DNA of 64,000 nt. It comes from Laetmonice hystrix (lineage: Eukaryota). The position numbers and the translations under genes are program-made. Shown piece after piece: positions 1 to 64,000 of this stretch. Position 1 is the first letter of the stretch, and each line of letters opens with the position of its first letter. The stretch covers positions 11,408,001 through 11,472,000 of the forward strand of contig OZ249436.1 in NCBI GenBank assembly GCA_965235115.1, given 5' to 3'. A model generated the notes under the pieces. The model made no database searches and was not told where the DNA came from. It saw nothing but the letters and a program-made list of their open reading frames with translations.

Positions 1-95
1 AGAGACTGGGTCAGGTAGACGCTGCCAGTCCGGTTGTCAATACGGAAGAAATGTTCGGCAGGGTACACTCCGGTCAAGGCGTACACGGTCGAACC
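1..95 (-). CDS. cadherin exon E118 (B, truncated by window edge)
   Basis: GSTVYALTGVYPAEHFFRIDNRTGSVYLTQS. Confidence 0.85.
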
Positions 96-3000
96 CTGAG
101 AGAGGAAATCATATGGAGAAACATCAGGACAGATGTGATGAGAAAACTATAACTATCTCTACAACTACCACCTTTTTCTATGGCTACAAGATGTACCAAA
201 AGTTACCATTACGGGATGGGGGTTGGTGAGGAGGGGTTAACTCACCGCTCGGTCTCGGTCGTTGGCCTTGATGTTAACGACTGGAGTGCCCTCTACTGGA
301 TGGTTGATGCTGATGGTGTCGTCAAACTTGCCCTCAAACTCAGGGAGGTACTGGTCGCGCTGCACTTTGACTTGAACTACCACGGAGGCAGTCCGCTCAG
401 GCACCTTACCATCTCTGGCTGATACTTGGATCTGTAAACATCGGGACAGTACATATCATTGGTGGCAATGGTTGGGGTGCATAGAACCAAACTCAGGAGG
501 AAAAGGAAAATGTTATATATGAACAATGGTGCATTGTTATACTGGGCCTATACTCACATTATAAAGTGTCTGGGTGCCCTCCGTAAGTAGTCGCTTCAAT
601 GTGATCGTGCCGGTATCTGCGTTGATGTAGAAGAACTGCCTTGCAATGTTATCTCCCGTAATGGAATACTTTAGACTGTCCTGAAAACAGAAAATATCAT
701 TTAACCAAATGTAACTATATAAAAAGGGGACAAGAAAACTTGACTTGTATATGAACCGTACAGGTGACAGTGACTTACCCCATCCAGATCGGTGGCGTTC
801 ACCTGTGTAACAAAGGCGCCCAGTTCGACCGTTTCAGGTCCTTCCACAGCGTAGTTAGACTGTGTGAACGTGGGGCCGTTCTCATTGCGGGTTACCGCTA
901 TGGTTACTACTGCAGTCGTCCTCTGTCCAGGGCTCGCACTGTCATAGGCCACGATACGTAACTAAAACATACATCCCACATGGTGATCAATATACAGCCG
1001 GCACGATCATCTAGAAAACTTTATATTACATACGTAAAAATAACATGTATATCAGAATGTTTATGTCTTTTCCCCTCGCGAATTTCAAATTGTATACCTT
1101 CAATGGCTCAACGAGCTCTCTGACCCATACAACCTTGCTATATTCATGACGACTGTCGGTATAATTGACGTCAATACTTACCGTGTACTTGGTCTCATCG
1201 TCTGCCTTGAGGTTACTCTTCACCACCAGGTGGCCGTTATCCTCATTGATACCAAAGAACGTGGGAGCTGGCATGTCTCCGATTACAGCGTACTTCATGG
1301 ACCCTCTCAGATCTCGGTCCAAGGCTTGTACCTTGGTGTAGAACTCCCGACCTACAGGAGCGTTCTCCGAGACGGTGGCGTCTTTGTAAGGTGTGTCACT
1401 GAACGACGGCTTCGACTCGTCTCGGGTAATTGTCACGATGACGGTGGCGTTAGCGATTCGCTCTGGGTCACGGTTGTCGGTGGCTTGGATACGTAACTGC
1501 CAATCGGAATTTATAGTTTGAATCAATCGCATCAACTGTTGTTGAAGTTCAATAACTTTCATGATTTGTAAAACAAATATTGGTATTCCCCTAACAATTT
1601 CGCTCATATCGCTTCCAAAGCTATCCAAATACAAGGTTGAAGAATCAAACAAGAAAGACAGCGTTGTTTGTGATTTACTATCCTGTATTATCATTAGCCC
1701 GACTCTCCCTGAGACAATGTTGTGTTTTACTTACCGACTCCCCCTGAGACAGTCTTGTGTTTTACTTACTGACTCTCCCTGAGACAGTGTTGTGTTTTAC
1801 TTACTGACTCTCCCTGAGACAGTGTTGTGTTTAACTTACTGACTCTCCCTGAGACAGTCTTGTGTTTAACTTACTGACTCTTCCTGAGACAGTCTTGTGT
1901 TTTACTTACCGACTCTCCCTGAGACAGTGTTGTGTTTTACTTACCGACTCTCCCTGAGACAGTGTTGTGTTTTACTTACCGACTCTCCCTGAGACAGTGT
2001 TGTGTTTTACTTACCGACTCTCCCTGAGACAGTGTTGTGTTTTACTTACCGACTCTCCCTGAGACAGTGTTGTGTTTTACTTACCGACTCTCCCTGAGAC
2101 AGTGTTGTGTTTTACTTACCGACTCTCCCTGAGACAGTGTTGTGTTTTACTTACCGACTCTCCCTGAGACAGTGTTGTGTTTTACTTACTGACTCTCCCT
2201 GAGACAGTGTTGTGTTTTACTTACTGACTCTCCCTGAGACAGTGTTGTGTTTTACTTACCAACTCTCCCTGAGACAGTGTTGTGTTTTACTTACCAACTC
2301 TCCCTGAGACAGTGTTGTGTTTTACTTACCAACTCTCCCTGAGACAGTGTTGTGTTTTACTTACCGACTCTCCCTGAGACAGTGTTGCGTTTTACTTACC
2401 GTATATTGTTTCTCGGAAGTTTCCGTCAGTGGTTTGGTAACCGTGATAAGGCCAGTGAGAGGGTTCATATAGAAGAACGGTTTCACGATCTCAGGACCAA
2501 TCAACATGTAGCGAACCTCATCCTGCAACAAACCACGAATTATTTAATAATCTTCAAATATACATCTACTCGGAACATGCGACGAAACCGTACATGCCCT
2601 CCCCAATTCTTTGGTTTCTTGCATAATTCATTATAATAATGACGTGCGCGAGTGACACAAACAAGATAATCTACTATACCTAACTTAATCCTTTTCAAAT
2701 AAAATCACCACTTTATGTACAGAACGTTTACGGCTACAATATTTGATCTTGCTGTGTATTATTTAAAGAGCCATCCATTATCCCGCAATCCCCCCCCCCC
2801 CTACACACACACACCCACACTCCAGAAGTCCTGCCTCCCACTCACCCCGTCCCTATCGGTAGCCTCCACCCTGGCCACACTTTCCCCGATCGGGTAGTTC
2901 TCCACGATAGTGGCCGGGTAGTTGGAGCGGGCGAACACGGGCCCGTTCACGTTTCTTCTCACTGTGATTATGACGTCTGTGGTGGCTCGTTGGTTGGGGT

Positions 3001-6000
3001 TTGAACTGTCGTATACCTGGACCCTCAGCTGGTCACATAGAAACAGAGGTACATGAGGATAAGACACAGGATATGACGGTCTAATATAATGTATACTATC
3101 GCCTTGTAGTTTAAAATGATCATATGAAACAATACTGACACAGGTTAAGTCATCCAAAGATAAAGGACAGGTATTGCCTGAGTTCACTCACCACGTATCT
3201 AGTTGATATGTCATTCTTCAGAGGACTCCGGACATACACGTTACCGTTCTTATCTACCCAGAAGTAACTTGGCGCTGACAGGTTACCAACGACCTCATAC
3301 ATCAACACCCCCTACAGGAGACAACAGGTACTACGACTTTAGACAATTCTCTTCATCCGTGCCGCCATAATTTCTCCCGGTTTTCTTTTTACGAACGACT
3401 GAAGTAATTTGCTACCTGAATACTAACAAAAACTGAACTTTGGCCAATTATATGAAGGTGGTCATCACCTTGCACCTGATTCTACAGGAAAGTAAATAAT
3501 TGTGTATCCAAACTTTACCTTAAGATCCTGATCCTGGGCAATGATCCTGACAATGGAAGATCCATTGACAGCCTCGTTTTCAGTGATGGTCTTCTCGTAC
3601 TTTGGGAAGGCGACTGTGGGCGGGTACTGGTCACGTGACAGAGTTAGCTGTACCTGGGTCGTCGACATCTTCTCTGGGTTCGACTGGTCACGTGCCCGTA
3701 TAGTGAACTGTGGGGGGAAATATAACGATAAAATATTAATATTCACAAAGTCTCAACGGGTGTAATGATAGTGGGGGCAATAAAATTCCACCACAGATTC
3801 CGCTCATAAAGGTCTCTGCTGACCAACAGAGACCTGTATGAGCGAAGTTGAGAATGAGAATATACACATGTAATACTGACCGCATATCTGTTTTTCTCGG
3901 CCTCCGCCAGGGGTCTCTTAGCGGTGACGTCTCCCGTGTCGGGGTTGATCCAGAAATAGGTGATGGCTGCTTGCCCCTCCTCGTCATCCACGATCTCATA
4001 CTGTATCACGTCCTTCTGTAACGGCAACGGAACAATAATCTCAGCCACATGGTCATCTCATGTTGGTTTCTACAACATGACAGAAAACAAGCAAACACTC
4101 TCTTTGGTTTCTGTTAAAATCTACTCACGGCGTCCCTGTCGGTGGCCTTCACGGTCAAGATCCCCACACCGATCGGGAAGTTCTCAGACACTTCTTTCTG
4201 GTAGATGTTCTTCTCAAACTGTGGTGTGAATTCGTTTCTCCTCACTGGTAGTACGAGCTCCGTGAAGATCCGCTGCTTGGGGTTGGCACTGTCGTACGCG
4301 GCCACTCTCAACTGTAAAACAAAACAACTTCTGTCACTTCAGAAATATTTACAAGTAACATGCTGCCTGAAATTACAACTTATAAATTCTCATGCTCTCT
4401 TAAAACGTCTCTCAAATTGGTTGGAGTAAAGTTCCCCTTTCTACTTTACAATTATTCCAAATTCAGTGCCTATTTAGACAAACACCTCCCGGGGCCACTG
4501 ACCGTGTATGAACTGAGTCGGAGAGGATCATCCTTGAGATTACCGATCGTACGGACCACCCCGGTGGTACGGCCCACACCGAAATACTGACGGGCTGGGT
4601 ACAGACCTACAGCCTCGTATATCAGCTCACCCTGTAACAAAACCAACACGTCACATACGTCATCAAGGTTATGAAACGGTCAGCCTCATTGGCTATGATA
4701 AAACATAAACAATCTTAGGTTTTGTGAAACCTTAAATTAATCATCCCGCAAATAATAAGTGGAATATCATGAATATGCCTTATTATTTTATGAATGAAGA
4801 TGAGATAAACATTATTGTGGTATTGGACAAACCTTGAGGTCTGAATCCTCAGCTTTGACAGTGTACACTCCGCTAAGGTTGGCAGAGTTTTCAGACACAG
4901 TTCCCGGAATGTAAGGCAGGTTCTTCCAGACAGGTGGTTCCTCATCTCGAGCAATGGTCAGCGCGATGCTGGCATTGGCTGACTTACCCCGTCCGTCGGT
5001 CGCCTGCACTAGGAGCTGGTGAGAGACAGTCAAAAACACAATTAGTAAAACTTAGACTCTAAAACAGCTTACATTTCGACGGAGTATAAGAAATATAAAT
5101 CCTGTAAAACACGAGAAATGGTCTCCTGCTGCCCTCTGGCGGTAAACTTGGGAGCCGCTTGGTAAGTGACGTAAATTTTATATTGGCCTCCAGCTATTGA
5201 GTTCACCCTCACAACCCCCTCCTTCCCCACGGCTACTTACTCTGTATCCAGCTATTGAATTCACCCTCACAACTCCCTCCTTCCCCACGGCTACTTACTC
5301 TGTATCCAGCTATTGAATTCCCCCTCACAACCCCCTGGTTCCCCACGGCTACTTACTCTGTATCCAGCTATTGAATTAACCCTCACAACCCCCTCCTTCC
5401 CCACGGCTACTTACTCTGTATGCGTTCTTGGCCGTAGAGAGTGGTTTCTTCAGCCGAACAATTCCAGTGCTTTCCTCCAACAGGAAGAAATCTGCGCCAT
5501 CATCGCTGGCCGACACCATTGAGTAGGTCACTTTGTCCTGCGATAAAACATTCACAATACGCTTACCTATGGGCATTAAATGATGAGAAACCCTTCAGGC
5601 AGGAACAGTGCTTACAGAACACAATCTTTACATGAGAGCAATGAAGAGCAATGGATCTCTACCAATGAGACTGCCCCTGACGAGCCACTTTACTTTGAGA
5701 CTGCCACCAGCTCCCCCTCCCACCCCGCCAGATACAGCTGCTGCCACCTACCGTCGAGTCGGCATCTCGTGCCGAGACCTGTATGATCGTCTCGCCGACA
5801 CCAAAGCTCTCGGCGATGGCCTTCTGGAGGGTGGCGGTGGGTCTGAACACAGGCCCGTTCACGTTACGCTGAACGTTCACCAAGAGTCGCGCAGTGGCCC
5901 TCTGGTCTGGGAACTCGCTGTCATACGACACCAGGTTCAGCTGAAAGAGAGTGCAGTAACAATGTACGAAAACTTCACAAACGTGGACTACCAGTACAAT

Positions 6001-60000: not shown

Positions 60001-63000
60001 AAATATCATCTTTTGATAACCTTTATTCGTAATAAAATAAACATTAATCAGTCTAGTTATTCAAGGTTGAAGATGAACTGACCCGTTGGAAGATGGCACC
60101 GAGTACTTGATGACCTTGTTGTTGCCGACATCAGCATCCGTGGCTGAGACAGTGCCCACAAATTCGTTGTTCTTGTTCTCACGTACACTGAACTCAACGG
60201 GTTGTTTGGTAACGAAGACAGGGCTGTTGTCGTTAATATCGGTGACTGTGATCGACAGGGTCGTGGTGGCAGACTGAAGTAACAATAACAGTTATGGTAT
60301 ATGACATTCCTGTTATTTTCTCTCTTTTGTTTTCATTCGTGTATTTAAAATAAACCGGTACTGGAATGCAGTACAAACTTGCTGGATGGAAACTTACTCT
60401 CTCGGGGTTGTCATCCTGAGCTTTGATCTTGAGGGCGTAACTGCCTTTGGTTTCACGATCGAGAAGTTTGGTGGTGCTGATCACACCCCTGAAAACCAAC
60501 CAAACGAACAACGTGAAATAAGACACATCAAATTTATATACTGATTCACCAAGGAGTATCTAAAGACACAGCAACAAGACAATTCACACAAACCAGCCAC
60601 ACTTACTTTGTTCTGTCTATCGCGAAAACCTCTCCAGTATTGCCTTCATAAATGGCGAATACCAGATTGTCTCCCTCCGGATCTGTAGCCTGTACAAGGT
60701 GGGAAATAAAAATGTTTTACTCTCATGTACAAAACACCACCCACCCCTTAATACTACACAGTCGGACTCTAATATAACGGTCATTCTTCCATTCACTAAT
60801 AATGAACACATCCAACGTCCTACGGTTCCATGTGTACTAAGATCTCCTAGGCTGTGACCCGGCACACTGAGATCAATTGTAAGTTGTATATGATCTCCTA
60901 GGCTGTGACCCGGCACACTGAGATCGATTGTAATTAATGGTATGAGTACTAATGACCACGTACGGGTACGGTGAAGACCTCCGAGCCGACGAGCACGCCC
61001 TCACTGAGGGACACAGTGTACTGAGGTGCCGGGATGATCGGACCCAGGTTCTTGTCGAGTTCCACCTCCACCGTGACCAGTGTCAGTGACTCTCTCCTCA
61101 CTCTCTGCGGCGCCTGGTCCTCAGCCTCCACTGTGATGATATATTGCTCACCACGCTTGACGACAGCTGTTACTGAGATCTGACCAGAGGTAGCGTCGAT
61201 AGAGAACTTGTTACCGCCGTCATTGGATACTGATTGGATGCCGTACCGTACCTGACCGAACGCACCGTCATCAGCGTCGGTCGCCTCAACCTGACCGGGG
61301 CAAACGGAATCGTGGTAAACGTCATTTTGCAGAACTTTCAAAAAAATGTTATGTAACGTGTTTGTCTTATTGTTCTGTTTTATTTCTACCAGATTTCTAC
61401 CTTTTTTTTAGCAATTCAATAATAATAGTATAATGTCAAAAGGCAGATCCAAGGATGGTTCAGGAGGTACAGACCCCTTGTAACTAGTTTTTTTAAAGCC
61501 CCCCCCCCCCCAGTAGAAATCCCTGCTACGTACCTTGACGACCGGCCTGCGTCCCTCGCCCTCCTTGATGGTGACCGAGTAACCTGAGGGCGGGAATTTT
61601 GGAGCATTGTCGTTCTGGTCGAGTACGGTAACAGTGATGTCTGCCGTACTCGACTTGGGCGTCTCCACTCCGGCCTCGGTAACGATCGCCCGGAATGACA
61701 CCTTCTTCAGCGTCTCGTAATCCAGGTCGTCCACATTGAGTGCCACGAAACCATCCTTGGTGATGGTAAACATACCAGTGCCGTCCACCCGGTAGTTAAA
61801 CACCATGTCGGGATCATCTTCAGTCTGGGTAGTTCAAGTCAAATTACGTATCAGAAGAATGCATGAAGTGTTTCAAGAAAATAACAAGTAAAAGCATTAC
61901 GAGGGAAATCTTTGTGAACAAAGTCAGAGTTTGACTCCTAACATTCAAGTATTATCGGAACCACCCTGTTACAGGTCTTTCACTATCTGCCCTCTATGTT
62001 TCCTCTGACCGACTTCTGTCGAGGAACCGGGATACCAGGAACAAGACAATATTCAAGTCTGTAGGAGCCTCAACTCAACCACCTGTTAACTTTACTGTGA
62101 ATACAGACATATAAAGGTTACCTGTAAATATTCATTGTGGTTTTTCTAAGGATGGAGCATATAATTATAGGCGGGACACTTCATAGATTCTGCCCCAATC
62201 GAGCCAACTAGTGAGGCCGGCGACGACAGTCATTCTTCCCTCGCATACAAAAAGATAGGGATCTCCCTGACCTCGGATGGCACTTACAGGATTATACATA
62301 ATGACGCTACTTAACATAGATCTGAGGTTCTAAACATACTGTGAGTCTAAAATCAAGTTAGCATCTGTTTCTTTTATAAACTACTGACGCCGCCTTTCCA
62401 GAAAGAACACTGGCGACTGTTCTCCGTCAGACGTGTGTCTAATTTAAATGTTTCAATCAGTGAGCCATGGGCCTAGAAACGTTTCCAATGAGACAGTGTC
62501 ACTCAGTGAGCCGTGGGCATGGACACGTTTCCAATGAGACGGTGTCACTCGGTGAGCCGTGGGCCTGGAAACGTTTCCAATAAAACGGTGTCACTCAGTG
62601 AGCCGTGGGCCTGGAAACATTTCACAGAAAAGGTGTCACTCGGTGAGCCGTGGGCCTAGAAACGTTTACATTTAGACGGTGTCACTCAGTGAGCCGTGGG
62701 CCTGGAAATGGTTCACAGAGACGGTGCCACTCAGTGAGCCATGGGCCTGGAAATGGTTCACAGAGAAGGTGTCACTCAGTGAGCCGTGGGCCTGGAAACG
62801 GTTCACAGAGAAGGTGTCACTCAGTGAGCCATGGGCCTGGAAACATTTTACACAGAAAGTGTCACTCAGTGAGCCATGGGCCTGGAAACATTTTACACAG
62901 AAAGTGTCACTCAGTGAGCCGTGGGCCTGGAAACGGTTCACAAAGAAGGTGTCACTCAGTGAGCCATGGGCCTGGAAATGGTTCACGGAGACGGTGTCAC

Positions 63001-63833
63001 TCAGTGAGCCGTGGGCCTGGAAATGGTTCACACAGAAAGTGTCACTAAGTGACCTGTAATTCGCCCTCACCTGGTCAGGATCCCGGACGATGAGTCGGAG
63101 AGCGGCGGCCCCGAGCAGGTCAGTGACGAGCGTGTTCTTCTGAGCGTTCTCGTAGATGTAACCAGTAAAATCTCTCAGAGAACTGGTGATCACTGGTGCT
63201 GCCTCGTTAGTCGGTGTCACCTGGATGACCAGGTCGGCCGTCGTATAGCGCACGTTCTGTGATACCTCCTGGGCCTGCAGTCAATGTAGTTCACATCAGT
63301 GTTAGATTTCGGAGAACTTACTGCATGGTTTCTCCAAACATAGTCAGGACGAAATCAGGTTCTATTTGTCCTTTGAAACTAAGTGATAGCTAAGAGACGG
63401 AGTGAAAAGAAAGTGGTATGTTGTGACTTACTCTGATGGTGAGTGTGATTGACCGGGTGTTTTGTCTGTCGATGGCCTTCAGCTGGGTGACCGCCCCAGT
63501 GTTACTATCAACGCTAAAACTATCTCTATAGTCTGATGGGAAGGCTGTAAATAAACAAGTTACGTTTGTCGTAAAATAATATCTACCCGACATCAACAAT
63601 CAGGGAATGTGACATACCGCATATACTACATGACAGTACTTTCTCATCTACGTCATACAGCAGATACATTACAGAGGAAAGAAAAAAAGGGAAAACACAA
63701 CCAGGCATTTGGTTATCACTGATCATAAAGAGTGGCAGACGTTACCTCTCACTAGACTGTACTGAATCGGATAATTTAATGTGTCCATGTCCTTAGCCTT
63801 AATTGCCTCTGGTTCCACGGTGAGTTGACCAGT
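1..63833 (-). CDS. Giant multi-exon cadherin-superfamily gene (partial at both ends; ~118 exons, ~65 EC repeats)
   Basis: Consecutive GT-AG bounded exons join in frame into cadherin repeats (PE, DxD, Y-x-I-x-G, F-x-I-x-x-x-TG, A-x-D-x-G-x-P motifs); intron phases are compatible at every junction checked; no TM segment or stop seen. Confidence 0.93.
246..431 (-). CDS. cadherin exon E117 (A)
   Basis: IQVSARDGKVP...RDQYLP...NDRDRA. Confidence 0.87.
558..680 (-). CDS. cadherin exon E116 (B)
   Basis: DSLKYSITG...FFYINADTG...TLYN. Confidence 0.87.
779..961 (-). CDS. cadherin exon E115 (A)
   Basis: LRIVAYDSASP...RNENGP...TDLDG. Confidence 0.89.
1182..1496 (-). CDS. cadherin exon E114 (A+B fused)
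   Basis: LRIQATDNRDP...RDESKP...DRDLRGSMKY...TKYT. Confidence 0.9.
1701..2399. repeat. 35-bp minisatellite, ~20 copies, each containing a copy of the E113 donor (G|GTAAGT on minus)
   Basis: unit ttttacttaccgactctccctgagacagtgttgtg. Confidence 0.95.
2400..2522 (-). CDS. cadherin exon E113 (B)
   Basis: DEVRYMLIG...FFYMNPLTG...KQYT. Confidence 0.86.
2846..3028 (-). CDS. cadherin exon E112 (A)
   Basis: LRVQVYDSSNP...RNVNGP...TDRDG. Confidence 0.89.
3192..3311 (-). CDS. cadherin exon E111 (B)
   Basis: GVLMYEVVGNLSAPSYF...TRYV. Confidence 0.86.
3519..3707 (-). CDS. cadherin exon E110 (A)
   Basis: FTIRARDQSNP...RDQYPP...QDQDLK. Confidence 0.89.
3881..4015 (-). CDS. cadherin exon E109 (B; NAGNAG acceptor, 4015 or 4012)
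   Basis: KDVIQYEIV...YFWINPDTG...NRYA. Confidence 0.86.
4129..4311 (-). CDS. cadherin exon E108 (A)
   Basis: LRVAAYDSANP...RNEFTP...TDRDA. Confidence 0.89.
4503..4631 (-). CDS. cadherin exon E107 (B)
   Basis: GELIYEAVGLYPARQYF...SSYT. Confidence 0.86.
4833..5015 (-). CDS. cadherin exon E106 (A)
   Basis: LLVQATDGRG...RDEEPP...EDSDLK. Confidence 0.88.
5129..5142 (-). promoter_or_regulatory. CTCF-like motif
   Basis: CCGCCAGAGGGCAG on minus. Confidence 0.45.
5188..5421. repeat. 58-bp tandem repeat x4 duplicating the E105 3' end and donor
   Basis: cttactctgtat at 5236, 5294, 5352, 5410. Confidence 0.92.
5415..5537 (-). CDS. cadherin exon E105 (B)
   Basis: DKVTYSMV...FFLLEESTG...NAYR. Confidence 0.87.
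5752..5940 (-). CDS. cadherin exon E104 (A)
   Basis: LNLVSYDSEFP...RNVNGP...RDADST. Confidence 0.89.
5983..6523. repeat. 19-bp minisatellite with 13-bp truncated variants
   Basis: unit ataggtctaccagtacaat. Confidence 0.95.
6530..7430. repeat. GC-rich variable-length satellite with internal (CAG)n runs, roughly 25-30 units
   Basis: core ggcctgaggacagggggcagcagc. Confidence 0.95.
7440..7580 (-). CDS. cadherin exon E103 (B)
   Basis: GEMLYEIAGVYPAPSFF...ANYQ. Confidence 0.87.
7607..7623 (-). promoter_or_regulatory. CTCF-like motif
   Basis: GCCGCTAGGTGGCGCTG on minus. Confidence 0.5.
8457..8470. promoter_or_regulatory. RFX X-box-like motif
   Basis: GTTTCCATAGCAAC fits GTHNYYATRRNAAC. Confidence 0.3.
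9302..9490 (-). CDS. cadherin exon E102 (A)
   Basis: LTVQASDQALP...RDNQPP...SDANRQ. Confidence 0.89.
10380..10966. repeat. 49/50-bp minisatellite, ~12 copies, mid-intron
   Basis: unit gggaatgtaccggctcatggtatacaagtacgtatgggccatctgaaca. Confidence 0.95.
11847..11969 (-). CDS. cadherin exon E101 (B)
   Basis: DIIRYSLVG...FFYINPTTG...ATYT. Confidence 0.89.
12260..12442 (-). CDS. cadherin exon E100 (A)
   Basis: LRVTAVDDQDP...RNANAP...TDSDG. Confidence 0.89.
12573..13032. repeat. 42-bp minisatellite, ~11 copies, starting ~6 nt after the E99 donor
   Basis: unit tgtgttgagttgtaatgctagcagtgagtgtatcaagttcta. Confidence 0.95.
13038..13187 (-). CDS. cadherin exon E99 (extended B)
   Basis: VAAEDQDLVGKIQF...PAPTYF...TVYT; in-frame TGA just upstream fixes the acceptor. 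Confidence 0.82.
13414..13572 (-). CDS. cadherin exon E98 (shortened A)
   Basis: LNIEVCDDNVPQKC...RQQSSP...SSIFK; donor gtcggt inferred from phase. Confidence 0.8.
13705..13827 (-). CDS. cadherin exon E97 (B)
   Basis: DQITYELIG...FYINPDSG...NTFT. Confidence 0.89.
14021..14203 (-). CDS. cadherin exon E96 (A)
   Basis: VRVVAYDTAY...RNEYAP...TDADK. Confidence 0.89.
14361..14375 (+). promoter_or_regulatory. CTCF-like motif
   Basis: CCACCAGGTGGCGCC. Confidence 0.5.
14432..14749 (-). CDS. cadherin exon E95 (A+B fused)
   Basis: LEIEASDQGTP...HDPDLMEKIKFEITGDYPAP...TLYR. Confidence 0.9.
16512..16526 (+). promoter_or_regulatory. CTCF-like motif
   Basis: CCACCAGGGGGACAC. Confidence 0.4.
16608..16769. 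mobile_element. MITE-like element (Tc1/mariner-pogo type)
   Basis: TA|cagtcaaacctcgt ... acgaggtctaattg|TA: imperfect 14-bp TIR with TA on both flanks. Confidence 0.55.
17284..17406 (-). CDS. cadherin exon E94 (B)
   Basis: DKIVYRAEG...YFHVDADTG...TGFE. Confidence 0.88.
17543..17557 (+). promoter_or_regulatory. CTCF-like motif
   Basis: CCACCAGGTGGCGCA. Confidence 0.5.
17647..17958 (-). CDS. cadherin exon E93 (B+A fused)
   Basis: GRIQYAIVGDFPAP...SYKIRVLAYD...RNENRP...TDPDG. Confidence 0.89.
19026..19211 (-). CDS. cadherin exon E92 (A)
   Basis: FAVRARDNRDP...RNNENP...RDRDIQ. Confidence 0.89.
19357..19494 (-). CDS. cadherin exon E91 (B)
   Basis: DQITYELPG...YFFVTPDTG...KQYT. Confidence 0.86.
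19669..19851 (-). CDS. cadherin exon E90 (A)
   Basis: LRVTVHDSGNP...RNVNTP...TDADG. Confidence 0.89.
19969..20091 (-). CDS. cadherin exon E89 (B)
   Basis: GQLKYRIIGDPPSPNFF...PYYI. Confidence 0.87.
20243..20431 (-). CDS. cadherin exon E88 (A)
   Basis: FRVEAEDQGIP...RDEHSP...RDKDQK. Confidence 0.89.
20467..20832. repeat. 33-bp minisatellite, ~11 copies
   Basis: unit gtcttcccagaacgtcccccaaacctttcttta. Confidence 0.95.
20898..21020 (-). CDS. cadherin exon E87 (B)
   Basis: DPIEYKLL...FFYLNPETG...KEFT. Confidence 0.87.
21150..21332 (-). CDS. cadherin exon E86 (A)
   Basis: LKVIAFDTIYP...RNPNAP...TDADK. Confidence 0.89.
21412..21553. mobile_element. possible Helitron/Helentron-derived fragment
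   Basis: tattattatt start and perfect terminal hairpin agacccg-tag-cgggtct followed by gtt; family assignment is inference. Confidence 0.25.
21582..21710 (-). CDS. cadherin exon E85 (B)
   Basis: GNIEYSLIGEYPAQDFF...ATYV. Confidence 0.87.
21870..22067 (-). CDS. cadherin exon E84 (A)
   Basis: IQLRVRDQRDP...RDKQKP...TDQDKK. Confidence 0.87.
22047..22428. repeat. 76-bp tandem repeat x5 duplicating the E84 acceptor and first ~21 exon nt
   Basis: gttgtatctgg at 22061, 22137, 22213, 22289, 22365. Confidence 0.93.
22513..22635 (-). CDS. cadherin exon E83 (B)
   Basis: DTLQYSIRG...YYIDPITG...ENDE. Confidence 0.88.
22843..23025 (-). CDS. cadherin exon E82 (A)
   Basis: LPVTVYDSGRP...RNENAP...TDADG. 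Confidence 0.88.
23011..23508. repeat. 83-bp tandem repeat x6 duplicating the E82 acceptor and first ~15 exon nt
   Basis: taccgtca at 23011, 23094, 23177, 23260, 23343, 23426. Confidence 0.93.
23866..23994 (-). CDS. cadherin exon E81 (B)
   Basis: QSLRYSLL...FSIREDNG...VMYR. Confidence 0.86.
27289..27471 (-). CDS. cadherin exon E80 (A)
   Basis: FKVEASDQANPP...RDRPP...RDEDRK. Confidence 0.89.
27632..27754 (-). CDS. cadherin exon E79 (B)
   Basis: DVIVYRIIPK...FYLNPSTG...TEYR. Confidence 0.86.
27749..28575. repeat. 66/71-bp tandem repeat, ~12 copies, duplicating the E79 acceptor
   Basis: gacatcctgagatacaacaaaaacac repeated through the intron. Confidence 0.93.
28596..28781 (-). CDS. cadherin exon E78 (A)
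   Basis: LMVQATYQG...RNERQP...TDQDKH. Confidence 0.88.
28939..29067 (-). CDS. cadherin exon E77 (B)
   Basis: KNIQYSVVGTSNAPDYF...NSYL. Confidence 0.87.
29181..29357 (-). CDS. cadherin exon E76 (A, lacks DxD)
   Basis: VKVKATDAGVPP...RDEGDLKF...VRASPG. Confidence 0.88.
29532..29663 (-). CDS. cadherin exon E75 (B)
   Basis: APNNVLSYSISGEG...RDYR. Confidence 0.89.
29808..29993 (-). CDS. cadherin exon E74 (A)
   Basis: LRVLAEDGGTPP...RNLNSP...TDADTA. Confidence 0.89.
30137..30271 (-). CDS. cadherin exon E73 (B)
   Basis: EPFNKVKYTLIGDDSAPSFF...TTYI. Confidence 0.88.
30470..30664 (-). CDS. cadherin exon E72 (A)
   Basis: FRALAQDLAG...RNKNAP...RDSDRK. Confidence 0.88.
30807..30944 (-). CDS. cadherin exon E71 (B)
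   Basis: SPYNDLRY...YFMIDPETG...TSYS. Confidence 0.89.
31117..31302 (-). CDS. cadherin exon E70 (A)
   Basis: IRVVAKDGGTP...RNQFAP...TDRDTR. Confidence 0.88.
31282..31488. repeat. 51-bp tandem repeat x4 duplicating the E70 acceptor and first 21 exon nt
   Basis: atccttggcaaccac at 31282, 31333, 31384, 31435. Confidence 0.92.
31661..31792 (-). CDS. cadherin exon E69 (B)
   Basis: PEYKNITYEIVGDDAAPTYF...TDYQ. Confidence 0.88.
32074..32265 (-). CDS. cadherin exon E68 (A)
   Basis: ITVIAMDEGLP...RNLQTP...DDRDSD. Confidence 0.89.
32372..32860. repeat. 41-bp tandem repeat x12 duplicating the last 18 nt of E67 and its donor
   Basis: unit gtcgtttctgtgagacttactgtgtactgtttggtgttgag. Confidence 0.94.
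32843..32974 (-). CDS. cadherin exon E67 (B)
   Basis: TPHNKVHYEI...FLIDEKTG...KQYT. Confidence 0.88.
33342..33481. mobile_element. possible short TIR element with TTAA-like ends
   Basis: tgaagggagatttcaag ... cttgaaagtccccttaa, 13/17 inverted match. Confidence 0.3.
35109..35294 (-). CDS. cadherin exon E66 (A)
   Basis: LRVMVSDGGIPPC...RNVYAP...TDRDSQ. Confidence 0.89.
35418..35744 (-). CDS. cadherin exon E65 (A+B fused)
   Basis: IVVKARDLGTP...RNKNCP...DFDPQNTPFRKLNF...IQYK. Confidence 0.9.
35881..36204 (-). CDS. cadherin exon E64 (A+B fused)
   Basis: LRVLAADGGDP...RNLFAP...DQDTKAPHNVIRY...STYT. Confidence 0.9.
36318..36452 (-). CDS. cadherin exon E63 (B)
   Basis: APFNKVTYRIIGDNKAPTFF...TMYT. 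Confidence 0.89.
36579..36905 (-). CDS. cadherin exon E62 (B+A fused)
   Basis: KPYNDVYYEITG...TYSIKIRAYDGG...RNRQPP...TDQDKE. Confidence 0.9.
37054..37239 (-). CDS. cadherin exon E61 (A)
   Basis: IRVRVRDGGTP...RNFADPQW...KDSDRK. Confidence 0.89.
37330..37607. repeat. 93-bp tandem repeat x3 duplicating the 3' half of E60 and its donor, in frame
   Basis: donors after 37538, 37445, 37352; (VRTLSYHV-SINEAGDISVKRSLRETELEKLT)n is open. Confidence 0.93.
37538..37666 (-). CDS. cadherin exon E60 (B; alternative in-frame 3' ends at 37445 and 37352)
   Basis: GAFSDLTYDIIGDDTAPTYFSINEAG...EKLT. Confidence 0.85.
37915..38109 (-). CDS. cadherin exon E59 (A)
   Basis: LDIKATDGGNPPKVSSR...RNTNMP...RDRDTK. 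Confidence 0.89.
38113..38235. repeat. 38-bp tandem repeat x3 abutting the E59 acceptor
   Basis: unit aaaccggcgccacatcataatcacggcactaattacat. Confidence 0.85.
38426..38563 (-). CDS. cadherin exon E58 (B)
   Basis: APYNTFKF...YFMVNADTG...RTRYT. Confidence 0.87.
38809..38994 (-). CDS. cadherin exon E57 (A)
   Basis: VRVLARDGGTPP...RNLEAP...ADKDQK. Confidence 0.89.
39145..39276 (-). CDS. cadherin exon E56 (B)
   Basis: DIFRRVKYEIIGDDSAPVYF...TEYR. Confidence 0.87.
39559..39753 (-). CDS. cadherin exon E55 (A)
   Basis: PFTITATDQGKHP...RNDAAP...IKRNVD...KDTDTA. Confidence 0.86.
40012..40155 (-). CDS. cadherin exon E54 (B)
   Basis: RPYNVIRY...YFTVDAETG...KQYG. Confidence 0.86.
40192..40818. repeat. 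48/49-bp minisatellite, ~13 copies
   Basis: unit cacaccgaatcagtttgtcaactctaacgaaatctgactttaataacaa. Confidence 0.94.
40848..41033 (-). CDS. cadherin exon E53 (A)
   Basis: LRVVAVDGGSP...RNFQEP...RDRDKK. Confidence 0.89.
41160..41204. repeat. 33-bp two-copy duplication of the E52 3' end, second donor decayed
   Basis: gttgtagaagtc at 41160 and 41193. Confidence 0.7.
41193..41324 (-). CDS. cadherin exon E52 (B)
   Basis: APFNKVTYSLIGDDDGPTFF...DFYN. Confidence 0.89.
41612..41803 (-). CDS. cadherin exon E51 (A)
   Basis: LSVIAWDTGYP...RNLRAP...QDSDTA. Confidence 0.89.
43040..43162 (-). CDS. cadherin exon E50 (B)
   Basis: DSVYYEM...FFYVNRDTG...TDIR. Confidence 0.85.
43368..43550 (-). CDS. cadherin exon E49 (A)
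   Basis: IEAHVYDEANP...RNLNRP...TDKDK. Confidence 0.89.
43697..43819 (-). CDS. cadherin exon E48 (B)
   Basis: GTLIYDITGIVPAPYFF...FNYT. Confidence 0.87.
44015..44200 (-). CDS. cadherin exon E47 (A)
   Basis: FNIKASDKGVP...RDLKPP...RDDDKM. Confidence 0.89.
44309..44431 (-). CDS. cadherin exon E46 (B)
   Basis: DELEYTLIPK...VSYR. Confidence 0.89.
44608..44925 (-). CDS. cadherin exon E45 (B+A fused)
   Basis: DNVKYAILG...NYQLQVQAKRQF...RNEFAP...TDRDG. Confidence 0.9.
45286..45462 (-). CDS. cadherin exon E44 (A, lacks DxD)
   Basis: IKVVARDQGVP...RDRGTLRF...VVAAPG. Confidence 0.88.
45539..45553 (+). promoter_or_regulatory. CTCF-like motif
   Basis: CCACCAGGTGGCGCC. Confidence 0.5.
45698..45829 (-). 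CDS. cadherin exon E43 (B)
   Basis: APNNVIQYAIIGEG...SAYR. Confidence 0.89.
45994..46179 (-). CDS. cadherin exon E42 (A)
   Basis: LRIEARDGGTPP...RNLNAP...KDKDRE. Confidence 0.88.
46322..46456 (-). CDS. cadherin exon E41 (B)
   Basis: KPFRDVVLRLIGDDSAPTFF...TDYT. Confidence 0.86.
46519..46655. repeat. 37-bp tandem repeat x4
   Basis: atggtcacagtatgccgtccataggtaacggggtcga. Confidence 0.9.
46734..46746 (-). promoter_or_regulatory. CTCF-like motif
   Basis: CCGCTAGGTGGCG on minus. Confidence 0.42.
46780..46974 (-). CDS. cadherin exon E40 (A)
   Basis: VVIGAVDLGDP...RNMNAP...EDKDAM. Confidence 0.88.
47217..47348 (-). CDS. cadherin exon E39 (B)
   Basis: APDNELEYVVTGDTKA...TSYR. Confidence 0.87.
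47485..47670 (-). CDS. cadherin exon E38 (A)
   Basis: IRVVALDGGTPP...RNLKKP...SDSDKR. Confidence 0.89.
47879..48010 (-). CDS. cadherin exon E37 (B)
   Basis: APFNKITYEIIGDD...REYK. Confidence 0.87.
48003..48121. repeat. 58-bp two-copy duplication of the E37 acceptor and first 8 exon nt
   Basis: aatggtgcctacaaatgat at 48003 and 48061. Confidence 0.82.
48194..48382 (-). CDS. cadherin exon E36 (A)
   Basis: LNLYAIDKGVPP...RNKNSP...RDSDTR. Confidence 0.89.
48584..49210 (-). CDS. cadherin exon E35 (A+B+A+B fused, two EC repeats)
   Basis: FRVDATDLGTPP...ESYS, 627 nt uninterrupted. Confidence 0.92.
49328..49456 (-). CDS. cadherin exon E34 (B)
   Basis: YPHNVTRF...FFMIDEVSG...EKYE. Confidence 0.86.
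49605..49790 (-). CDS. cadherin exon E33 (A)
   Basis: IKILAKDGGTPP...RNLNRP...RDKDRV. Confidence 0.87.
50050..50181 (-). CDS. cadherin exon E32 (B)
   Basis: VPFNRVTYSIIGDDQAPAYF...TTYT. Confidence 0.88.
50363..50560 (-). CDS. cadherin exon E31 (A)
   Basis: LLVGATDLGLPEPC...RNENAP...TDRDTT. Confidence 0.88.
50654..50791 (-). CDS. cadherin exon E30 (B)
   Basis: TPFNQVRYTLYGD...KTYR. Confidence 0.87.
51019..51204 (-). CDS. cadherin exon E29 (A)
   Basis: LRVRAYDNGVP...RNLACPTW...NDRDTQ. Confidence 0.89.
51342..51473 (-). CDS. cadherin exon E28 (B)
   Basis: ETFEIIRYEVIGDDSAPSYF...TVYV. Confidence 0.88.
51615..51806 (-). CDS. cadherin exon E27 (A)
   Basis: IEVRAYDGGFPSKPSSR...RNKNAP...RDNDPK. 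Confidence 0.88.
51928..52065 (-). CDS. cadherin exon E26 (B)
   Basis: DPYKKVFYEIVGD...ERYR. Confidence 0.87.
52189..52380 (-). CDS. cadherin exon E25 (A)
   Basis: IRIEAADGDSPP...RNLEVP...LDKDRR. Confidence 0.87.
52697..52710 (-). promoter_or_regulatory. CTCF-like motif
   Basis: CCGATAGGTGGCGC on minus. Confidence 0.38.
52783..52911 (-). CDS. cadherin exon E24 (B)
   Basis: VPYNKVTYTIIGDDNAPTYF...EIYK. Confidence 0.89.
54310..54345. promoter_or_regulatory. pair of oppositely oriented CTCF-like motifs
   Basis: CCACTAGGTGGCACC (+, 54310-54324) and GCCGCCAGGGGGAG (-, 54332-54345). Confidence 0.45.
54407..54598 (-). CDS. cadherin exon E23 (A)
   Basis: LTIQARDKGMPSLSS...RNLNSP...IKRNVD...RDADIN. 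Confidence 0.89.
54726..54857 (-). CDS. cadherin exon E22 (B)
   Basis: EPHNVVQY...FFIVNEDTG...ARYS. Confidence 0.87.
55123..55440 (-). CDS. cadherin exon E21 (B+A fused)
   Basis: ERFGVVRYRIIGDD...EYQIRVEAFDNG...RNLNAP...TDTDQQ. Confidence 0.9.
55692..55880 (-). CDS. cadherin exon E20 (A)
   Basis: FRIIAKDLGTP...RNDNPP...NDRDPQ. Confidence 0.88.
55993..56130 (-). CDS. cadherin exon E19 (B)
   Basis: APNNQFFYEATGDTKA...KLYR. Confidence 0.88.
56422..56607 (-). CDS. cadherin exon E18 (A)
   Basis: IRVVAQDSGNPP...RNFFSPTW...RDRDRA. Confidence 0.89.
56831..56962 (-). CDS. cadherin exon E17 (B)
   Basis: EDFKTVTYGIIGDDTAPSFF...ELYR. Confidence 0.88.
57061..57255 (-). CDS. cadherin exon E16 (A)
   Basis: LEISAKDRGQP...RNTNDP...KDADTA. 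Confidence 0.88.
57450..57587 (-). CDS. cadherin exon E15 (B)
   Basis: APHKDVTY...YFMVNEDTG...RTRYT. Confidence 0.88.
57815..57994 (-). CDS. cadherin exon E14 (A)
   Basis: VRVRATDGG...RNLNAP...ADGDVQ. Confidence 0.86.
58146..58277 (-). CDS. cadherin exon E13 (B)
   Basis: APFNKIEFEIVGDGKAPRYF...LGYV. Confidence 0.88.
58384..58472. repeat. ~49-bp two-copy duplication of the E12 3' end, second donor decayed
   Basis: cggatataactcagt...cgttggtgt(t/c)cctgtccctg twice. Confidence 0.78.
58455..58640 (-). CDS. cadherin exon E12 (A)
   Basis: LTVMASDLGEPSLSS...RNNFAP...RDRDTN. Confidence 0.9.
58771..59031 (-). CDS. cadherin exon E11
   Basis: DQNDFTP...AEDKD...TSRYV (last canonical-type linker). Confidence 0.9.
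59211..59423 (-). CDS. cadherin exon E10
   Basis: AVDQDE...LDYE...SISVL. Confidence 0.88.
59672..59915 (-). CDS. cadherin exon E9
   Basis: FFTIGETNG...LDYE...DVEDVLP...TTVE; phase 2/0. Confidence 0.88.
60083..60273 (-). CDS. cadherin exon E8
   Basis: SATTT...DINDNSP...ATDAD...SSN; phase 0/2. Confidence 0.88.
60398..60488 (-). CDS. cadherin exon E7
   Basis: GVISTTKLLDRETKGSYALKIKAQDDNPER; phase 2/0. Confidence 0.88.
60607..60689 (-). CDS. cadherin exon E6
   Basis: ATDPEGD...FAIDRT; phase 0/2. Confidence 0.85.
60842..60932. repeat. 51-bp-period two-copy repeat near the E5 donor
   Basis: atctcctaggctgtgacccggcacactgagatc twice. Confidence 0.8.
60964..61290 (-). CDS. cadherin exon E5
   Basis: VEATDADD...DKNLGP...VFTVP. 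Confidence 0.88.
61534..61824 (-). CDS. cadherin exon E4
   Basis: TEDDPD...LDYE...DQNDNAP...PVVK. Confidence 0.88.
62457..63058. repeat. 45-bp minisatellite, ~13 copies, starting ~12 nt after the E3 donor
   Basis: unit gtgtcactcagtgagccgtgggcctggaaatggttcacagagaag. Confidence 0.95.
63071..63274 (-). CDS. cadherin exon E3
   Basis: AQEVSQ...PTNEAAP...IVRDPDQ. Confidence 0.85.
63432..63544 (-). CDS. cadherin exon E2
   Basis: FPSDYRDSFSVDSNTG...IDRQ...LTIR; phase 1/0. Confidence 0.85.
63746..63833 (-). CDS. cadherin exon E1
   Basis: TGQLTVEPEAIKAKDMDTLNYPIQYSLVR; ag/gt, phase 0/1. Confidence 0.8.
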
Positions 63834-64000
63834 CTGAAATAACAAATGTCATGTATGGAAGTCTCTCACGGAAACCAGAGGTATACTCTCAATGACAGAC
63901 TCGAGTTGGCACCACAACCATTAACAAAACTCACCTTACTGATTTTACTGGCATTTGTACGTGGGAATCAATTCTAAAATACGTTTATTTGACCCACAGA

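What the first reader, a model, noticed from the sequence alone, without database searches (positions are those of the whole stretch)
1..63833. Giant cadherin with about 65 EC repeats, still open at both window edges
Seen: 118 exons total about 20.8 kb of coding sequence (about 6,900 aa), all cadherin repeats, with no TM segment, EGF/LamG domain or stop. Known: Fat has 34 EC repeats; Dachsous and CDH23 have 27. Inference: this ectodomain has roughly twice as many repeats as Fat even before its ends are reached. At about 4.5 nm per EC it would span about 300 nm, suited to a long extracellular tether or filament (ciliary/microvillar link or matrix fibre). It is probably auto-annotated only as 'Fat4-like'.
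Basis: partly seen in the sequence, partly recalled or inferred. Interest (0 to 1): 0.85.

Follow-up and report, generated by a model that had tools for sequence, protein, structure and literature searches.

The report
Giant 86-repeat cadherin gene
The window holds the middle two thirds of one expressed gene for a membrane cadherin of about 9,400 residues and about 86 cadherin repeats, the largest complete member of an unstudied giant-cadherin family of molluscs, brachiopods and ribbon worms that databases label "Fat4-like" and usually cut into pieces.

Summary
On the minus strand the window carries 118 coding exons, about 20.9 kb of coding sequence and 66 complete cadherin (EC) repeats. It has no stop, membrane segment, EGF or LamG domain.

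With 100 kb fetched on each side, the array resolves into one gene, G000:C1:11376713-11479437 (103 kb). My model has 163 exons, 9,376 residues and no internal stop. It runs signal peptide, about 86 ECs, a membrane-adjacent domain (MAD), one membrane helix, then a tail of about 115 residues ending in NPxY.

One run from the sequenced animal behaves like RNA. It gives five spliced joints, and the model reproduces all five.

It is not a Fat cadherin. The N-terminal ECs align in order with protocadherin-15. The MAD of an orthologue folds like those of cadherin-23 and protocadherin-15.

About 75 repeats replace the calcium-binding DxNDN linker with a shorter Arg-Asn-x-Asn motif. Only lophotrochozoan relatives share it.

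Related loci in Patella and Tubulanus are visibly truncated or split in annotation. Partial entries of 7,076 and 7,916 residues exist for other molluscs.

A long surface tether is inferred, not shown.

The parts
1..64000 (-). Central part of one giant cadherin gene: 118 coding exons, about 20.9 kb of coding sequence, residues about 284-7250 of a 9,376-aa model. The whole gene is G000:C1:11376713-11479437, which is window -31287..71437.
   Evidence: Exon chain from dynamic programming on HMM and BLAST evidence, with no internal stop. All 215 repeat hits lie on the minus strand.
58771..63544 (-). The part of the N-terminal EC series (about EC3-EC8) that lies inside the window, with mostly canonical calcium linkers such as DQNDNAP, DINDNSP and DQNDFTP. 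It is collinear with the Potamilus orthologue. That orthologue's N-terminus aligns in register with protocadherin-15 EC1/2-EC6.
   Evidence: tblastn collinearity with P0029. P0029 residues 115-717 align to PCDH15 chain 11iy_C residues 89-670. Linker classes are listed.
1..58640 (-). Array of Arg-linker EC repeats. Most repeats are coded by two phase-0 exons: a junction exon of about 186 nt (last third of one EC plus first quarter of the next) and a mid exon of about 129 nt. The array continues to window -18109.
   Evidence: Alternating CN/M exon pattern. R at the linker position in 70 of 79 full ECs. 152 of 162 introns are phase 0.
48584..49210 (-). Largest exon in the window (627 nt). It spans two EC boundaries without an intron and was the query for the database searches.
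   Evidence: Pfam Cadherin E 1e-19. The RNA contig of run X4 covers 48767-49210 and splices on to 49328.
44201..44308 (-). Intron confirmed by a spliced contig (GT..AG on the minus strand).
   Evidence: read laying joint in run X4, reproduced by models v3-v5.
44926..45285 (-). Intron confirmed by a spliced contig.
   Evidence: joint 44924>45285, cut +1.
46975..47216 (-). Intron confirmed by a spliced contig.
   Evidence: joint 46972>47215, cut +2.
49211..49327 (-). Intron confirmed by a spliced contig.
49457..49604 (-). Intron confirmed by a spliced contig. Together with the previous intron it defines the 129-nt mid exon 49328-49456.
37337..37669 (-). Threefold tandem copy (93 nt each) of the 3' half of a mid exon plus its donor. 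Which donor is used is unknown, so the model is uncertain here by 0-62 residues.
   Evidence: Translation of segment 37298-37693. Three HMM hits at 37337-37669.

Best explanation
One very large gene on the minus strand encodes a type I membrane cadherin of about 9,400 residues.

Order of parts: signal peptide; about 8 N-terminal ECs with mostly normal calcium linkers; about 75 diverged ECs with the Arg linker; two more ECs; a ferredoxin-like membrane-adjacent domain (MAD); one membrane helix; a short tail ending in NPxY.

Shown:
- the exon chain and open reading frame;
- the domain content;
- splicing and expression at five introns;
- membership of a family found in molluscs, a brachiopod and a nemertean, with conserved N-terminus (matched in a bivalve), MAD, membrane helix and tail;
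- the same two-exons-per-EC, phase-0 gene structure in three phyla.

Inferred mechanism:
- The protein sits in an apical or outer cell membrane.
- It pairs side by side through its MAD, as protocadherin-15 does.
- It binds a partner through its calcium-dependent N-terminal ECs.
- The long Arg-linker array acts as a spacer or tether of up to a few hundred nanometres.
- The conserved arginine neutralises the acidic pocket that normally holds calcium sites 1 and 2, while site 3 ligands are kept. Stiffness would then depend less on calcium.
- The symmetric phase-0 exons explain how EC number could change so freely between species (about 27 to 86) by exon-pair duplication or loss.
For: Gene model: 163 exons, 28,131 nt, no internal stop. 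All 5 RNA joints are reproduced although they were not used to build it.

Single protein: only one strongly hydrophobic segment besides the signal peptide. No repeat hits occur elsewhere in the 100-kb flanks.

Expression: the RNA-like run X4 holds 0.20 and 0.15 of the words of two stretches about 50 kb apart, whose exon fractions are 0.51 and 0.26.

Both ends conserved: the N-terminus is collinear with Potamilus KAK3608192. The C-terminus is collinear with Patella, Lingula, Tubulanus and Potamilus proteins, including EYETQSL.MYVPPDE and INPxY.

[quoted passage not shown] The top 9 Foldseek matches are CDH23 MAD28 and PCDH15 MAD12, E 1e-6 to 8e-4. A MAD profile matches our model over its full length, E 3e-28, spread over four ordered exons.

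The Arg signature occurs only in lophotrochozoan relatives. The same CN/M exon alternation is seen in Patella, Tubulanus and Lingula loci.
Against: - No read or contig spans more than three exons, so a single 28-kb mRNA is not demonstrated. Alternative promoters, poly(A) sites or exon skipping could give shorter products.
- X4 is not on record as RNA. I infer this from its spliced contigs.
- Splice sites outside the 6 kb that was laid are predictions. The N- and C-terminal exons were placed with help from orthologues, and a few exons are uncertain (37.3-37.7 kb; the choice of last-exon acceptor).
- EC1 has no detectable sequence match to protocadherin-15 or to any solved structure.
- Calcium binding, stiffness, dimerisation, partner, cell type and location were not tested.
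- The arginine-in-pocket idea rests on motif statistics only.
Confidence: 0.72

Rival explanations
1. The array is transcribed as several shorter cadherin mRNAs, through internal promoters or poly(A) sites or heavy exon skipping. A 9,400-residue protein is then rare or never made.
For: 152 of 162 introns are phase 0, so almost any run of exons can be skipped in frame. NCBI lists isoforms of 6,411-7,723 aa for an unrelated giant cadherin of Nematostella. Only short contigs were available from X4. A threefold donor duplication at 37.3-37.7 kb offers alternative donors.
Against: There is no internal signal peptide or membrane segment, so internal-start products would not be secreted or anchored. 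RNA-like contigs occur in parts 50 kb apart. Every EC is kept open and conserved at its key positions despite about 32% mutual identity, which argues for selection on the whole array.
Confidence: 0.15
2. It is a true Fat or Dachsous orthologue, a planar-polarity cadherin that has simply gained repeats.
For: Database names of relatives. Weak partial matches to Pfam Cadherin_FAT4_N, which in most cases stay below its cut-off or give no qualifying stretch.
Against: Orthologues have no EGF or LamG domain. In our gene the space between the last EC and the membrane helix is filled by a MAD. The tail motifs are shared only with the lophotrochozoan family. The N-terminus aligns in register with protocadherin-15, not Fat4.
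Confidence: 0.04
3. Decaying pseudogene or assembly artefact (falsely expanded tandem repeat).
For: The size is extreme. Many minisatellites lie in the introns.
Against: 28 kb of coding sequence has no stop. The repeats are old and all different. Contigs of three DNA runs agree with the assembly at even depth. Spliced contigs exist. Comparable arrays stand in Patella and Tubulanus chromosomes.
Confidence: 0.03

Closest known systems
Unnamed lophotrochozoan 'protocadherin Fat 3/4-like' family. Members: Elysia crispata RRG08_040225 (7,916 aa, partial); Ylistrum balloti (7,076 aa, partial); Saccostrea cucullata (5,858 aa); Patella vulgata XP_055954920 + XP_055954929 and XP_050391949; Lingula XP_013411494; Tubulanus XP_074647699; Potamilus KAK3608192
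   Same: Arg-linker ECs, MAD, a conserved membrane helix with its flanks, and the tail EYETQSL.MYVPPDE...INPxY. The loci examined (Patella, Tubulanus, Lingula) also have two phase-0 exons per EC. The Potamilus entry also shares the N-terminus.
   Different: This is the longest member and the only giant one with both ends in hand: about 86 ECs, against about 27 (unionid mussels, complete) to at least 69 (Elysia, partial). Its membrane-helix motif (CFTWNRY) groups with the nemertean and a JGI entry rather than with molluscs. No member is characterised in the papers I could search.
Protocadherin-15 / Drosophila Cad99C (tip-link and microvillus cadherin)
   Same: Type I topology. The orthologue's ECs align in register with PCDH15 residues 89-670. 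The unusual DGDDxGP linker sits at the same EC2-EC3 position (PCDH15 is the best PDB match for that exon, E 5e-5). A ferredoxin-like MAD stands directly before the membrane.
   Different: 11 ECs against about 86. EC1 shows no sequence match. The MAD and tail show no sequence match to solved structures. PCDH15 has no Arg-linker repeats.
Cadherin-23
   Same: A long EC chain followed by a MAD. CDH23 MAD28 is the best structural match, E 1.2e-6, TM-score 0.64.
   Different: 27 ECs, mostly canonical calcium linkers, and a different N-terminus and tail.
Fat / Fat4 and Dachsous
   Same: Giant cadherins with many ECs; the source of the automatic names.
   Different: Fat has 34 ECs plus EGF and LamG domains and its own tail; Dachsous has 27 ECs. 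None of these features is present here.
Calcium-free or partly calcium-free EC linkers described for Drosophila N-cadherin, protocadherin-15, Fat and Dachsous (from my own knowledge of that literature)
   Same: Loss of DxNDN/DRE ligands at EC boundaries.
   Different: In those proteins such linkers are isolated exceptions. Here one uniform variant (Arg-Asn-x-Asn, one residue shorter, with DXD, XEX and the top Asp kept) is the rule in about 75 consecutive linkers.
Nematostella LOC116612238 (7,723 aa) and the Sycon 'Fat 1-like' protein (6,691 aa)
   Same: Predicted cadherins with about 50-70 ECs show that very long EC arrays exist elsewhere.
   Different: 0 of 55 and 2 of 47 of their ECs carry the Arg linker. 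No shared ends were found.

Membership tests
Cadherin superfamily | Tandem extracellular cadherin (EC) repeats recognised by Pfam PF00028 | tested here: met
   All 10 window segments match PF00028; 9 are above the curated cut-off. 84 EC hits in the spliced model.
Cadherin superfamily | Signal peptide and single-pass membrane anchor | tested here: met
   Signal-peptide exon at window 71356-71437, aligned with that of Potamilus. One hydrophobic helix at residues about 9240-9262.
Fat / Fat-like cadherins | EGF and laminin-G domains between the ECs and the membrane | tested here: not met
   Only cadherin-type families appear in three orthologues. In this gene the interval is occupied by a MAD.
Fat / Fat-like cadherins | About 32-34 ECs and a Fat-type cytoplasmic tail | tested here: not met
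   About 86 ECs. The tail matches only the lophotrochozoan family.
Protocadherin-15 / Cad99C | Membrane-adjacent ferredoxin-like domain (MAD) before the membrane helix | tested here: met
   The fold of the Tubulanus orthologue matches PCDH15 MAD12 and CDH23 MAD28. The profile matches this gene's product, E 3e-28.
Protocadherin-15 / Cad99C | Eleven ECs | tested here: not met
   About 86 ECs.
Protocadherin-15 / Cad99C | PCDH15-type EC1-EC2 tip that binds cadherin-23 | tested here: inconclusive
   Register-true similarity starts at the end of EC1. The DGDDxGP EC2-3 linker is shared. EC1 itself has no match. No binding test was done.
Lophotrochozoan Arg-linker giant cadherins (unnamed) | Majority of ECs with R-N-x-N in place of DxNDN | tested here: met
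   71 of 82 ECs here. Relatives: 14/24 to 55/63. Cnidarian, sponge and amphioxus giants: 0-3.
Lophotrochozoan Arg-linker giant cadherins (unnamed) | Conserved MAD, membrane helix and tail (EYETQSL.MYVPPDE ... INPxY) | tested here: met
   tblastn and profile alignments.
Lophotrochozoan Arg-linker giant cadherins (unnamed) | Two phase-0 exons per EC (junction exon plus mid exon) | tested here: met
   This gene. Patella, Tubulanus and Lingula loci show the same alternation. Intron phases in those loci were not checked.

The most novel reading that the evidence does not exclude
The Arg-Asn-x-Asn linker is a distinct, undescribed class of cadherin joint. A conserved arginine fills the place of calcium sites 1-2. 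This would give a long rod or spring whose mechanics are largely independent of calcium. Its length would be tuned between species, and possibly between isoforms, by adding or skipping symmetric phase-0 exon pairs. The family would then be a lophotrochozoan surface-tether system derived from the tip-link cadherin lineage (PCDH15/CDH23 type). It may be the 'Fat4-like' cadherin that keeps turning up in shell and mantle proteomes.
Probability: 0.2. Interest if true: 0.8.

Novelty: new variant of a known kind. Interest (0 to 1): 0.6.

Why it matters
- With about 86 ECs and about 9,400 residues, this would be the longest cadherin with both ends defined that I could find. Fat has 34 ECs. The largest related database entries are partial, at 7,076 and 7,916 residues.
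- It defines a conserved but unnamed family across at least three phyla. That family is mislabelled as Fat and is often split or truncated in annotation. This affects orthology tables, expression atlases and biomineral proteomes that report "protocadherin Fat 4".
- The uniform Arg-substituted linker gives structural biologists a natural series of about 75 variant joints. They can test how cadherin chains behave without full calcium loading.
- The link to the tip-link cadherins (N-terminal register, MAD) suggests how a short mechanosensory or microvillar cadherin architecture can be stretched into a tether of several hundred nanometres.

Tried and rejected
- A regular-expression scan for canonical cadherin motifs found only 7 sites on both strands and nearly misled me. 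The repeats lack those motifs.
- Three gene-model attempts failed the RNA test before the fourth passed. Generic evidence blocks ran into introns and kept in-frame introns (0 to 1 of 5 joints matched). Exon-type HMMs with boundary bonuses fixed it (5 of 5).
- Models v3 and v4 had rough ends, with micro-exons and one split-codon stop. Adding orthologue-guided evidence gave v5.
- No run is on record as RNA.
- No near-identical protein, and none marked as the window's own, appeared in the representative library or the word-indexed searches.
- The MAD and tail have no sequence match in the PDB. EC1 has none either.
- Literature searches for a described giant lophotrochozoan cadherin found nothing specific.
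- Several papers report 'protocadherin Fat 4' or cadherin domains in biomineral tissues: oyster mantle cells (bioRxiv 10.64898/2026.05.15.723513), Lingula shell matrix (PMC4595640) and chiton shell plates (PMC13564323). I could not verify that those proteins belong to this family, so they are only leads. The family also occurs in a shell-less nemertean.
- I did not fold an Arg-linker EC pair. No two complete ECs share an exon in the window, and the tool returns no side-chain coordinates.

Full report
**1. What is in the window**

The window is G000:C1:11408001-11472000 of a 627-Mb animal genome.

A first scan for classical cadherin motifs found almost nothing. Translation of the long stop-free segments showed repeat after repeat on the minus strand, of the form A.D.G.P ... 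V.RN...P.F ... Y...I.E ... A.D.D ... Y.I.GD ... F.I....G.I.

Pfam PF00028 matched all ten segments I submitted; nine scored above the curated cut-off and one below it.

A repeat HMM built from the window gave 215 hits in a 264-kb region (the window plus 100 kb on each side). All were on the minus strand and all lay between window -20374 and 61302. The signal is therefore real, strand-specific and confined to one locus.

**2. Exon structure and gene model**

The hits alternate with great regularity. A junction exon holds the last third of one EC plus the first quarter of the next. A mid exon follows.

Naive exon chaining failed when checked against RNA. I then built separate profiles for the two exon types and used them with splice-site scores in a dynamic programme.

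- The result reproduced all five spliced joints seen in run X4, which had not been used to build it.
- With orthologue-guided evidence for the two ends, the final model has 163 coding exons, 28,131 nt and 9,376 residues. It has no internal stop, and 152 of 162 introns are in phase 0.
- It spans window -31287..71437, which is C1:11376713-11479437, 102.7 kb.
- Inside the window lie 118 exons with 20,950 coding nt (20,575 in model v3) and 66 complete ECs.

Exons in the window, as low-high window coordinates: -33-95; 246-431; 558-680; 779-961; 1182-1496; 2400-2522; 2846-3028; 3192-3311; 3519-3707; 3881-4015; 4129-4311; 4503-4631; 4833-5015; 5415-5537; 5752-5940; 7329-7580; 9302-9490; 11847-11969; 12260-12442; 13038-13154; 13414-13572; 13705-13827; 14021-14203; 14432-14749; 17284-17406; 17647-17958; 19026-19211; 19357-19494; 19669-19851; 19969-20091; 20243-20431; 20898-21020; 21150-21332; 21582-21710; 21870-22067; 22513-22635; 22843-23025; 23866-23994; 27289-27471; 27632-27754; 28596-28781; 28939-29067; 29172-29357; 29532-29663; 29808-29993; 30137-30271; 30470-30646; 30807-30944; 31117-31302; 31661-31780; 32074-32265; 32843-32974; 35109-35294; 35418-35744; 35881-36204; 36318-36452; 36579-36905; 37054-37239; 37352-37465; 37538-37666; 37915-38109; 38426-38563; 38809-38994; 39145-39276; 39559-39753; 40012-40110; 40848-41033; 41193-41324; 41612-41803; 43040-43162; 43368-43550; 43697-43819; 44015-44200; 44309-44431; 44608-44925; 45286-45462; 45698-45829; 45994-46179; 46322-46456; 46780-46974; 47217-47348; 47485-47670; 47879-48010; 48194-48382; 48584-49210; 49328-49456; 49605-49790; 50050-50181; 50363-50560; 50654-50776; 51019-51204; 51342-51473; 51615-51806; 51928-52065; 52189-52380; 52783-52911; 54407-54598; 54726-54857; 55123-55440; 55692-55880; 55993-56130; 56422-56607; 56831-56950; 57061-57255; 57450-57587; 57815-57994; 58146-58277; 58455-58640; 58771-59031; 59181-59423; 59672-59915; 60083-60273; 60398-60559; 60630-60689; 60964-61334; 61530-61824; 63071-63274; 63432-63544.

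Six more exons lie to the right of the window, up to 71437. Thirty-nine lie to the left, down to -31287. Apart from the five RNA-checked introns, these are predictions.

**3. Architecture of the product**

The own-HMM finds 84 ECs. EC1 is missed by that HMM but aligns to the Potamilus orthologue, and one or two weak slots add to a total of about 86.

- The first exon encodes a signal peptide that ends where the Potamilus protein's does.
- After the last EC come four exons that together match, over its full length, a profile of the family's membrane-adjacent region.
- A single hydrophobic helix follows. It is the only such segment in the whole model besides the signal peptide.
- The tail of about 115 residues ends in INPIYQR.
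- No EGF or LamG domain is present in three orthologues, and there is no room for one here.

**4. Expression**

No run is on record as RNA.

Run X4, from the same sample as the assembly, holds only 0.20 of the words of window 44000-50000, where the exon fraction is 0.51. Its contigs skip five introns with GT..AG ends on the minus strand.

It also holds 0.15 of the words of the 10 kb just left of the window, where the exon fraction is 0.26.

Three DNA runs tile the laid region evenly.

The gene is therefore transcribed and spliced as modelled where I could look. A full-length mRNA is not shown.

**5. The repeats are old, and their linker is unusual**

ECs share 32% identity on average and 51% at most. 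Even offsets are slightly more similar than odd ones (0.35 against 0.315), a weak period of two. This excludes a recent or artefactual expansion.

Key positions across 79 full ECs:

| Canonical motif | What is found here |
|---|---|
| XEX glutamate | kept in 71% |
| DXD | both aspartates kept in 96% |
| Asp of A.D.G.P | kept in 91% |
| LDRE | reduced to L..D/E |
| DxNDN | replaced by a one-residue-shorter R-N-x-N, with Arg in 70 of 79 |

By the usual assignment of cadherin calcium ligands (my own knowledge), the ligands of site 3 survive. Those specific to sites 1 and 2 are largely gone. I infer that the arginine compensates for the missing positive charge.

The first eight or so ECs and the last two keep DxNDN-like linkers.

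**6. Relatives**

The best hits are lophotrochozoan entries named 'protocadherin Fat 1/3/4-like' or 'hypothetical protein'. The genera are Haliotis, Patella, Potamilus, Sinanodonta, Solemya, Saccostrea, Crassostrea, Batillaria, Gigantopelta, Aplysia, Plakobranchus, Elysia (7,916 aa, partial), Ylistrum (7,076 aa, partial), Lingula and Tubulanus.

- They share the Arg linker, which cnidarian, sponge and amphioxus giants lack.
- They share the MAD, the membrane helix and the tail motifs.
- Most entries start in the middle of an EC without a signal peptide.
- In Patella and Tubulanus, EC exons continue upstream of the annotated start to the end of the DNA I could fetch.
- In Patella, two adjacent models (2,190 and 2,892 aa, 4.4 kb apart) form one array of at least about 64 ECs ending in MAD and membrane helix.
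- Lingula (about 34 ECs) looks complete at its upstream end, and the unionid mussel proteins (about 27 ECs) start with a signal peptide and look complete.

EC number therefore truly varies, and public annotation under-reports it.

**7. Relation to known families**

The Potamilus N-terminus aligns in one register-true stretch with protocadherin-15 (residues 115-717 to 89-670, E 1.5e-42).

The exon of our gene that carries the EC2-EC3 linker has PCDH15 as its best PDB match, through the shared DGDDxGP motif.

[quoted passage not shown] It matches CDH23 MAD28 and PCDH15 MAD12 in the top nine places. This is the fold described for MAD12 in bioRxiv 10.1101/460097.

EC1, the MAD and the tail give no sequence-level match to solved structures.

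I therefore place the family beside the tip-link-type cadherins in architecture. I do not call it a PCDH15 orthologue, and I reject Fat membership.

**8. Function**

Shown: a secreted-pathway, single-pass, expressed protein with a huge EC chain.

Inferred:
- a surface tether or spacer whose calcium-dependent tip binds a partner;
- MAD-mediated pairing at the membrane;
- an Arg-linker shaft with reduced calcium dependence;
- an NPxY tail for adaptor binding or endocytosis.

At 4.5 nm per EC the fully extended length would be about 390 nm. This is an upper bound, given the altered linkers.

Reports of 'protocadherin Fat 4' or cadherin domains in oyster mantle cells, Lingula shell matrix and chiton shell plates are leads that I could not tie to this family.

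**9. Verdict**

It is one giant gene rather than an artefact. It is the largest member, with defined ends, of an unstudied and mislabelled family with a distinctive linker. Similar partial entries already sit in the databases, so the kind is not new, but the variant and its scale are.

The scan's other notes on this window concern sub-features of the same gene: two possible calcium-free hinges (s1-339578, s1-339587) and the triplicated half-exon (s1-339588).

Noticed in passing
L010 (window -29880..-31284, i.e. C1:11376716-11378120), minus strand: About 24 tandem 60-nt copies of the acceptor plus the first 11 codons of the last exon (SLAMYVPPDD followed by intron-like LMVTNLACFQ). They are in frame and each carries a usable acceptor. 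Which copy is spliced is unknown, so the tail could vary by 20-residue steps.
   Followed up: partly
L010 (window -25160..-25940), minus strand: Directly after the donor of the membrane-helix exon the intron starts with a long Pro-rich minisatellite that is open in all three frames (PPPQVRT / PGTYP units). It misled the exon chaining.
   Followed up: partly
window 37337-37669, minus strand: Threefold 93-nt duplication of half a mid exon together with its donor (also noted by the scan as s1-339588). It would add 0, 31 or 62 residues depending on which donor is used.
   Followed up: partly
window 44608-45462, minus strand: One EC boundary where DXD is replaced (VVAA) and the next EC has no A.D.G.P. 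This is a linker with no calcium ligands left, and it coincides with scan note s1-339578. The intron 44926-45285 inside it is RNA-confirmed.
   Followed up: partly
window 6480-7583, 10674-11033, 12561-13253, 20412-20893, 31164-31537, 62647-63056: Introns carry many minisatellites that stay open in several frames on both strands. They produce long false ORFs, for example 365 aa at 6477-7574.
   Followed up: no
G000:C4, e.g. 10009749-10010348, 15468660-15469304, 27320722-27323256: At least ten other cadherin loci on contig C4 lie in single open frames of 916-1,862 aa. They look like a cluster of intronless protocadherin-type genes.
   Followed up: no
L024/L025 (Patella vulgata OW026349.2: 14514983-14628323): Two adjacent NCBI models (XP_055954920, 2,190 aa; XP_055954929, 2,892 aa), 4.4 kb apart on the same strand, belong to one continuous EC-exon array of at least about 64 ECs. 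The array still runs on upstream of the fetched DNA, so this is a split and truncated annotation.
   Followed up: partly
whole gene (EC order): ECs an even number of positions apart are slightly more alike than those at odd offsets (0.35 against 0.315 mean identity). This suggests an ancestral two-EC unit.
   Followed up: no
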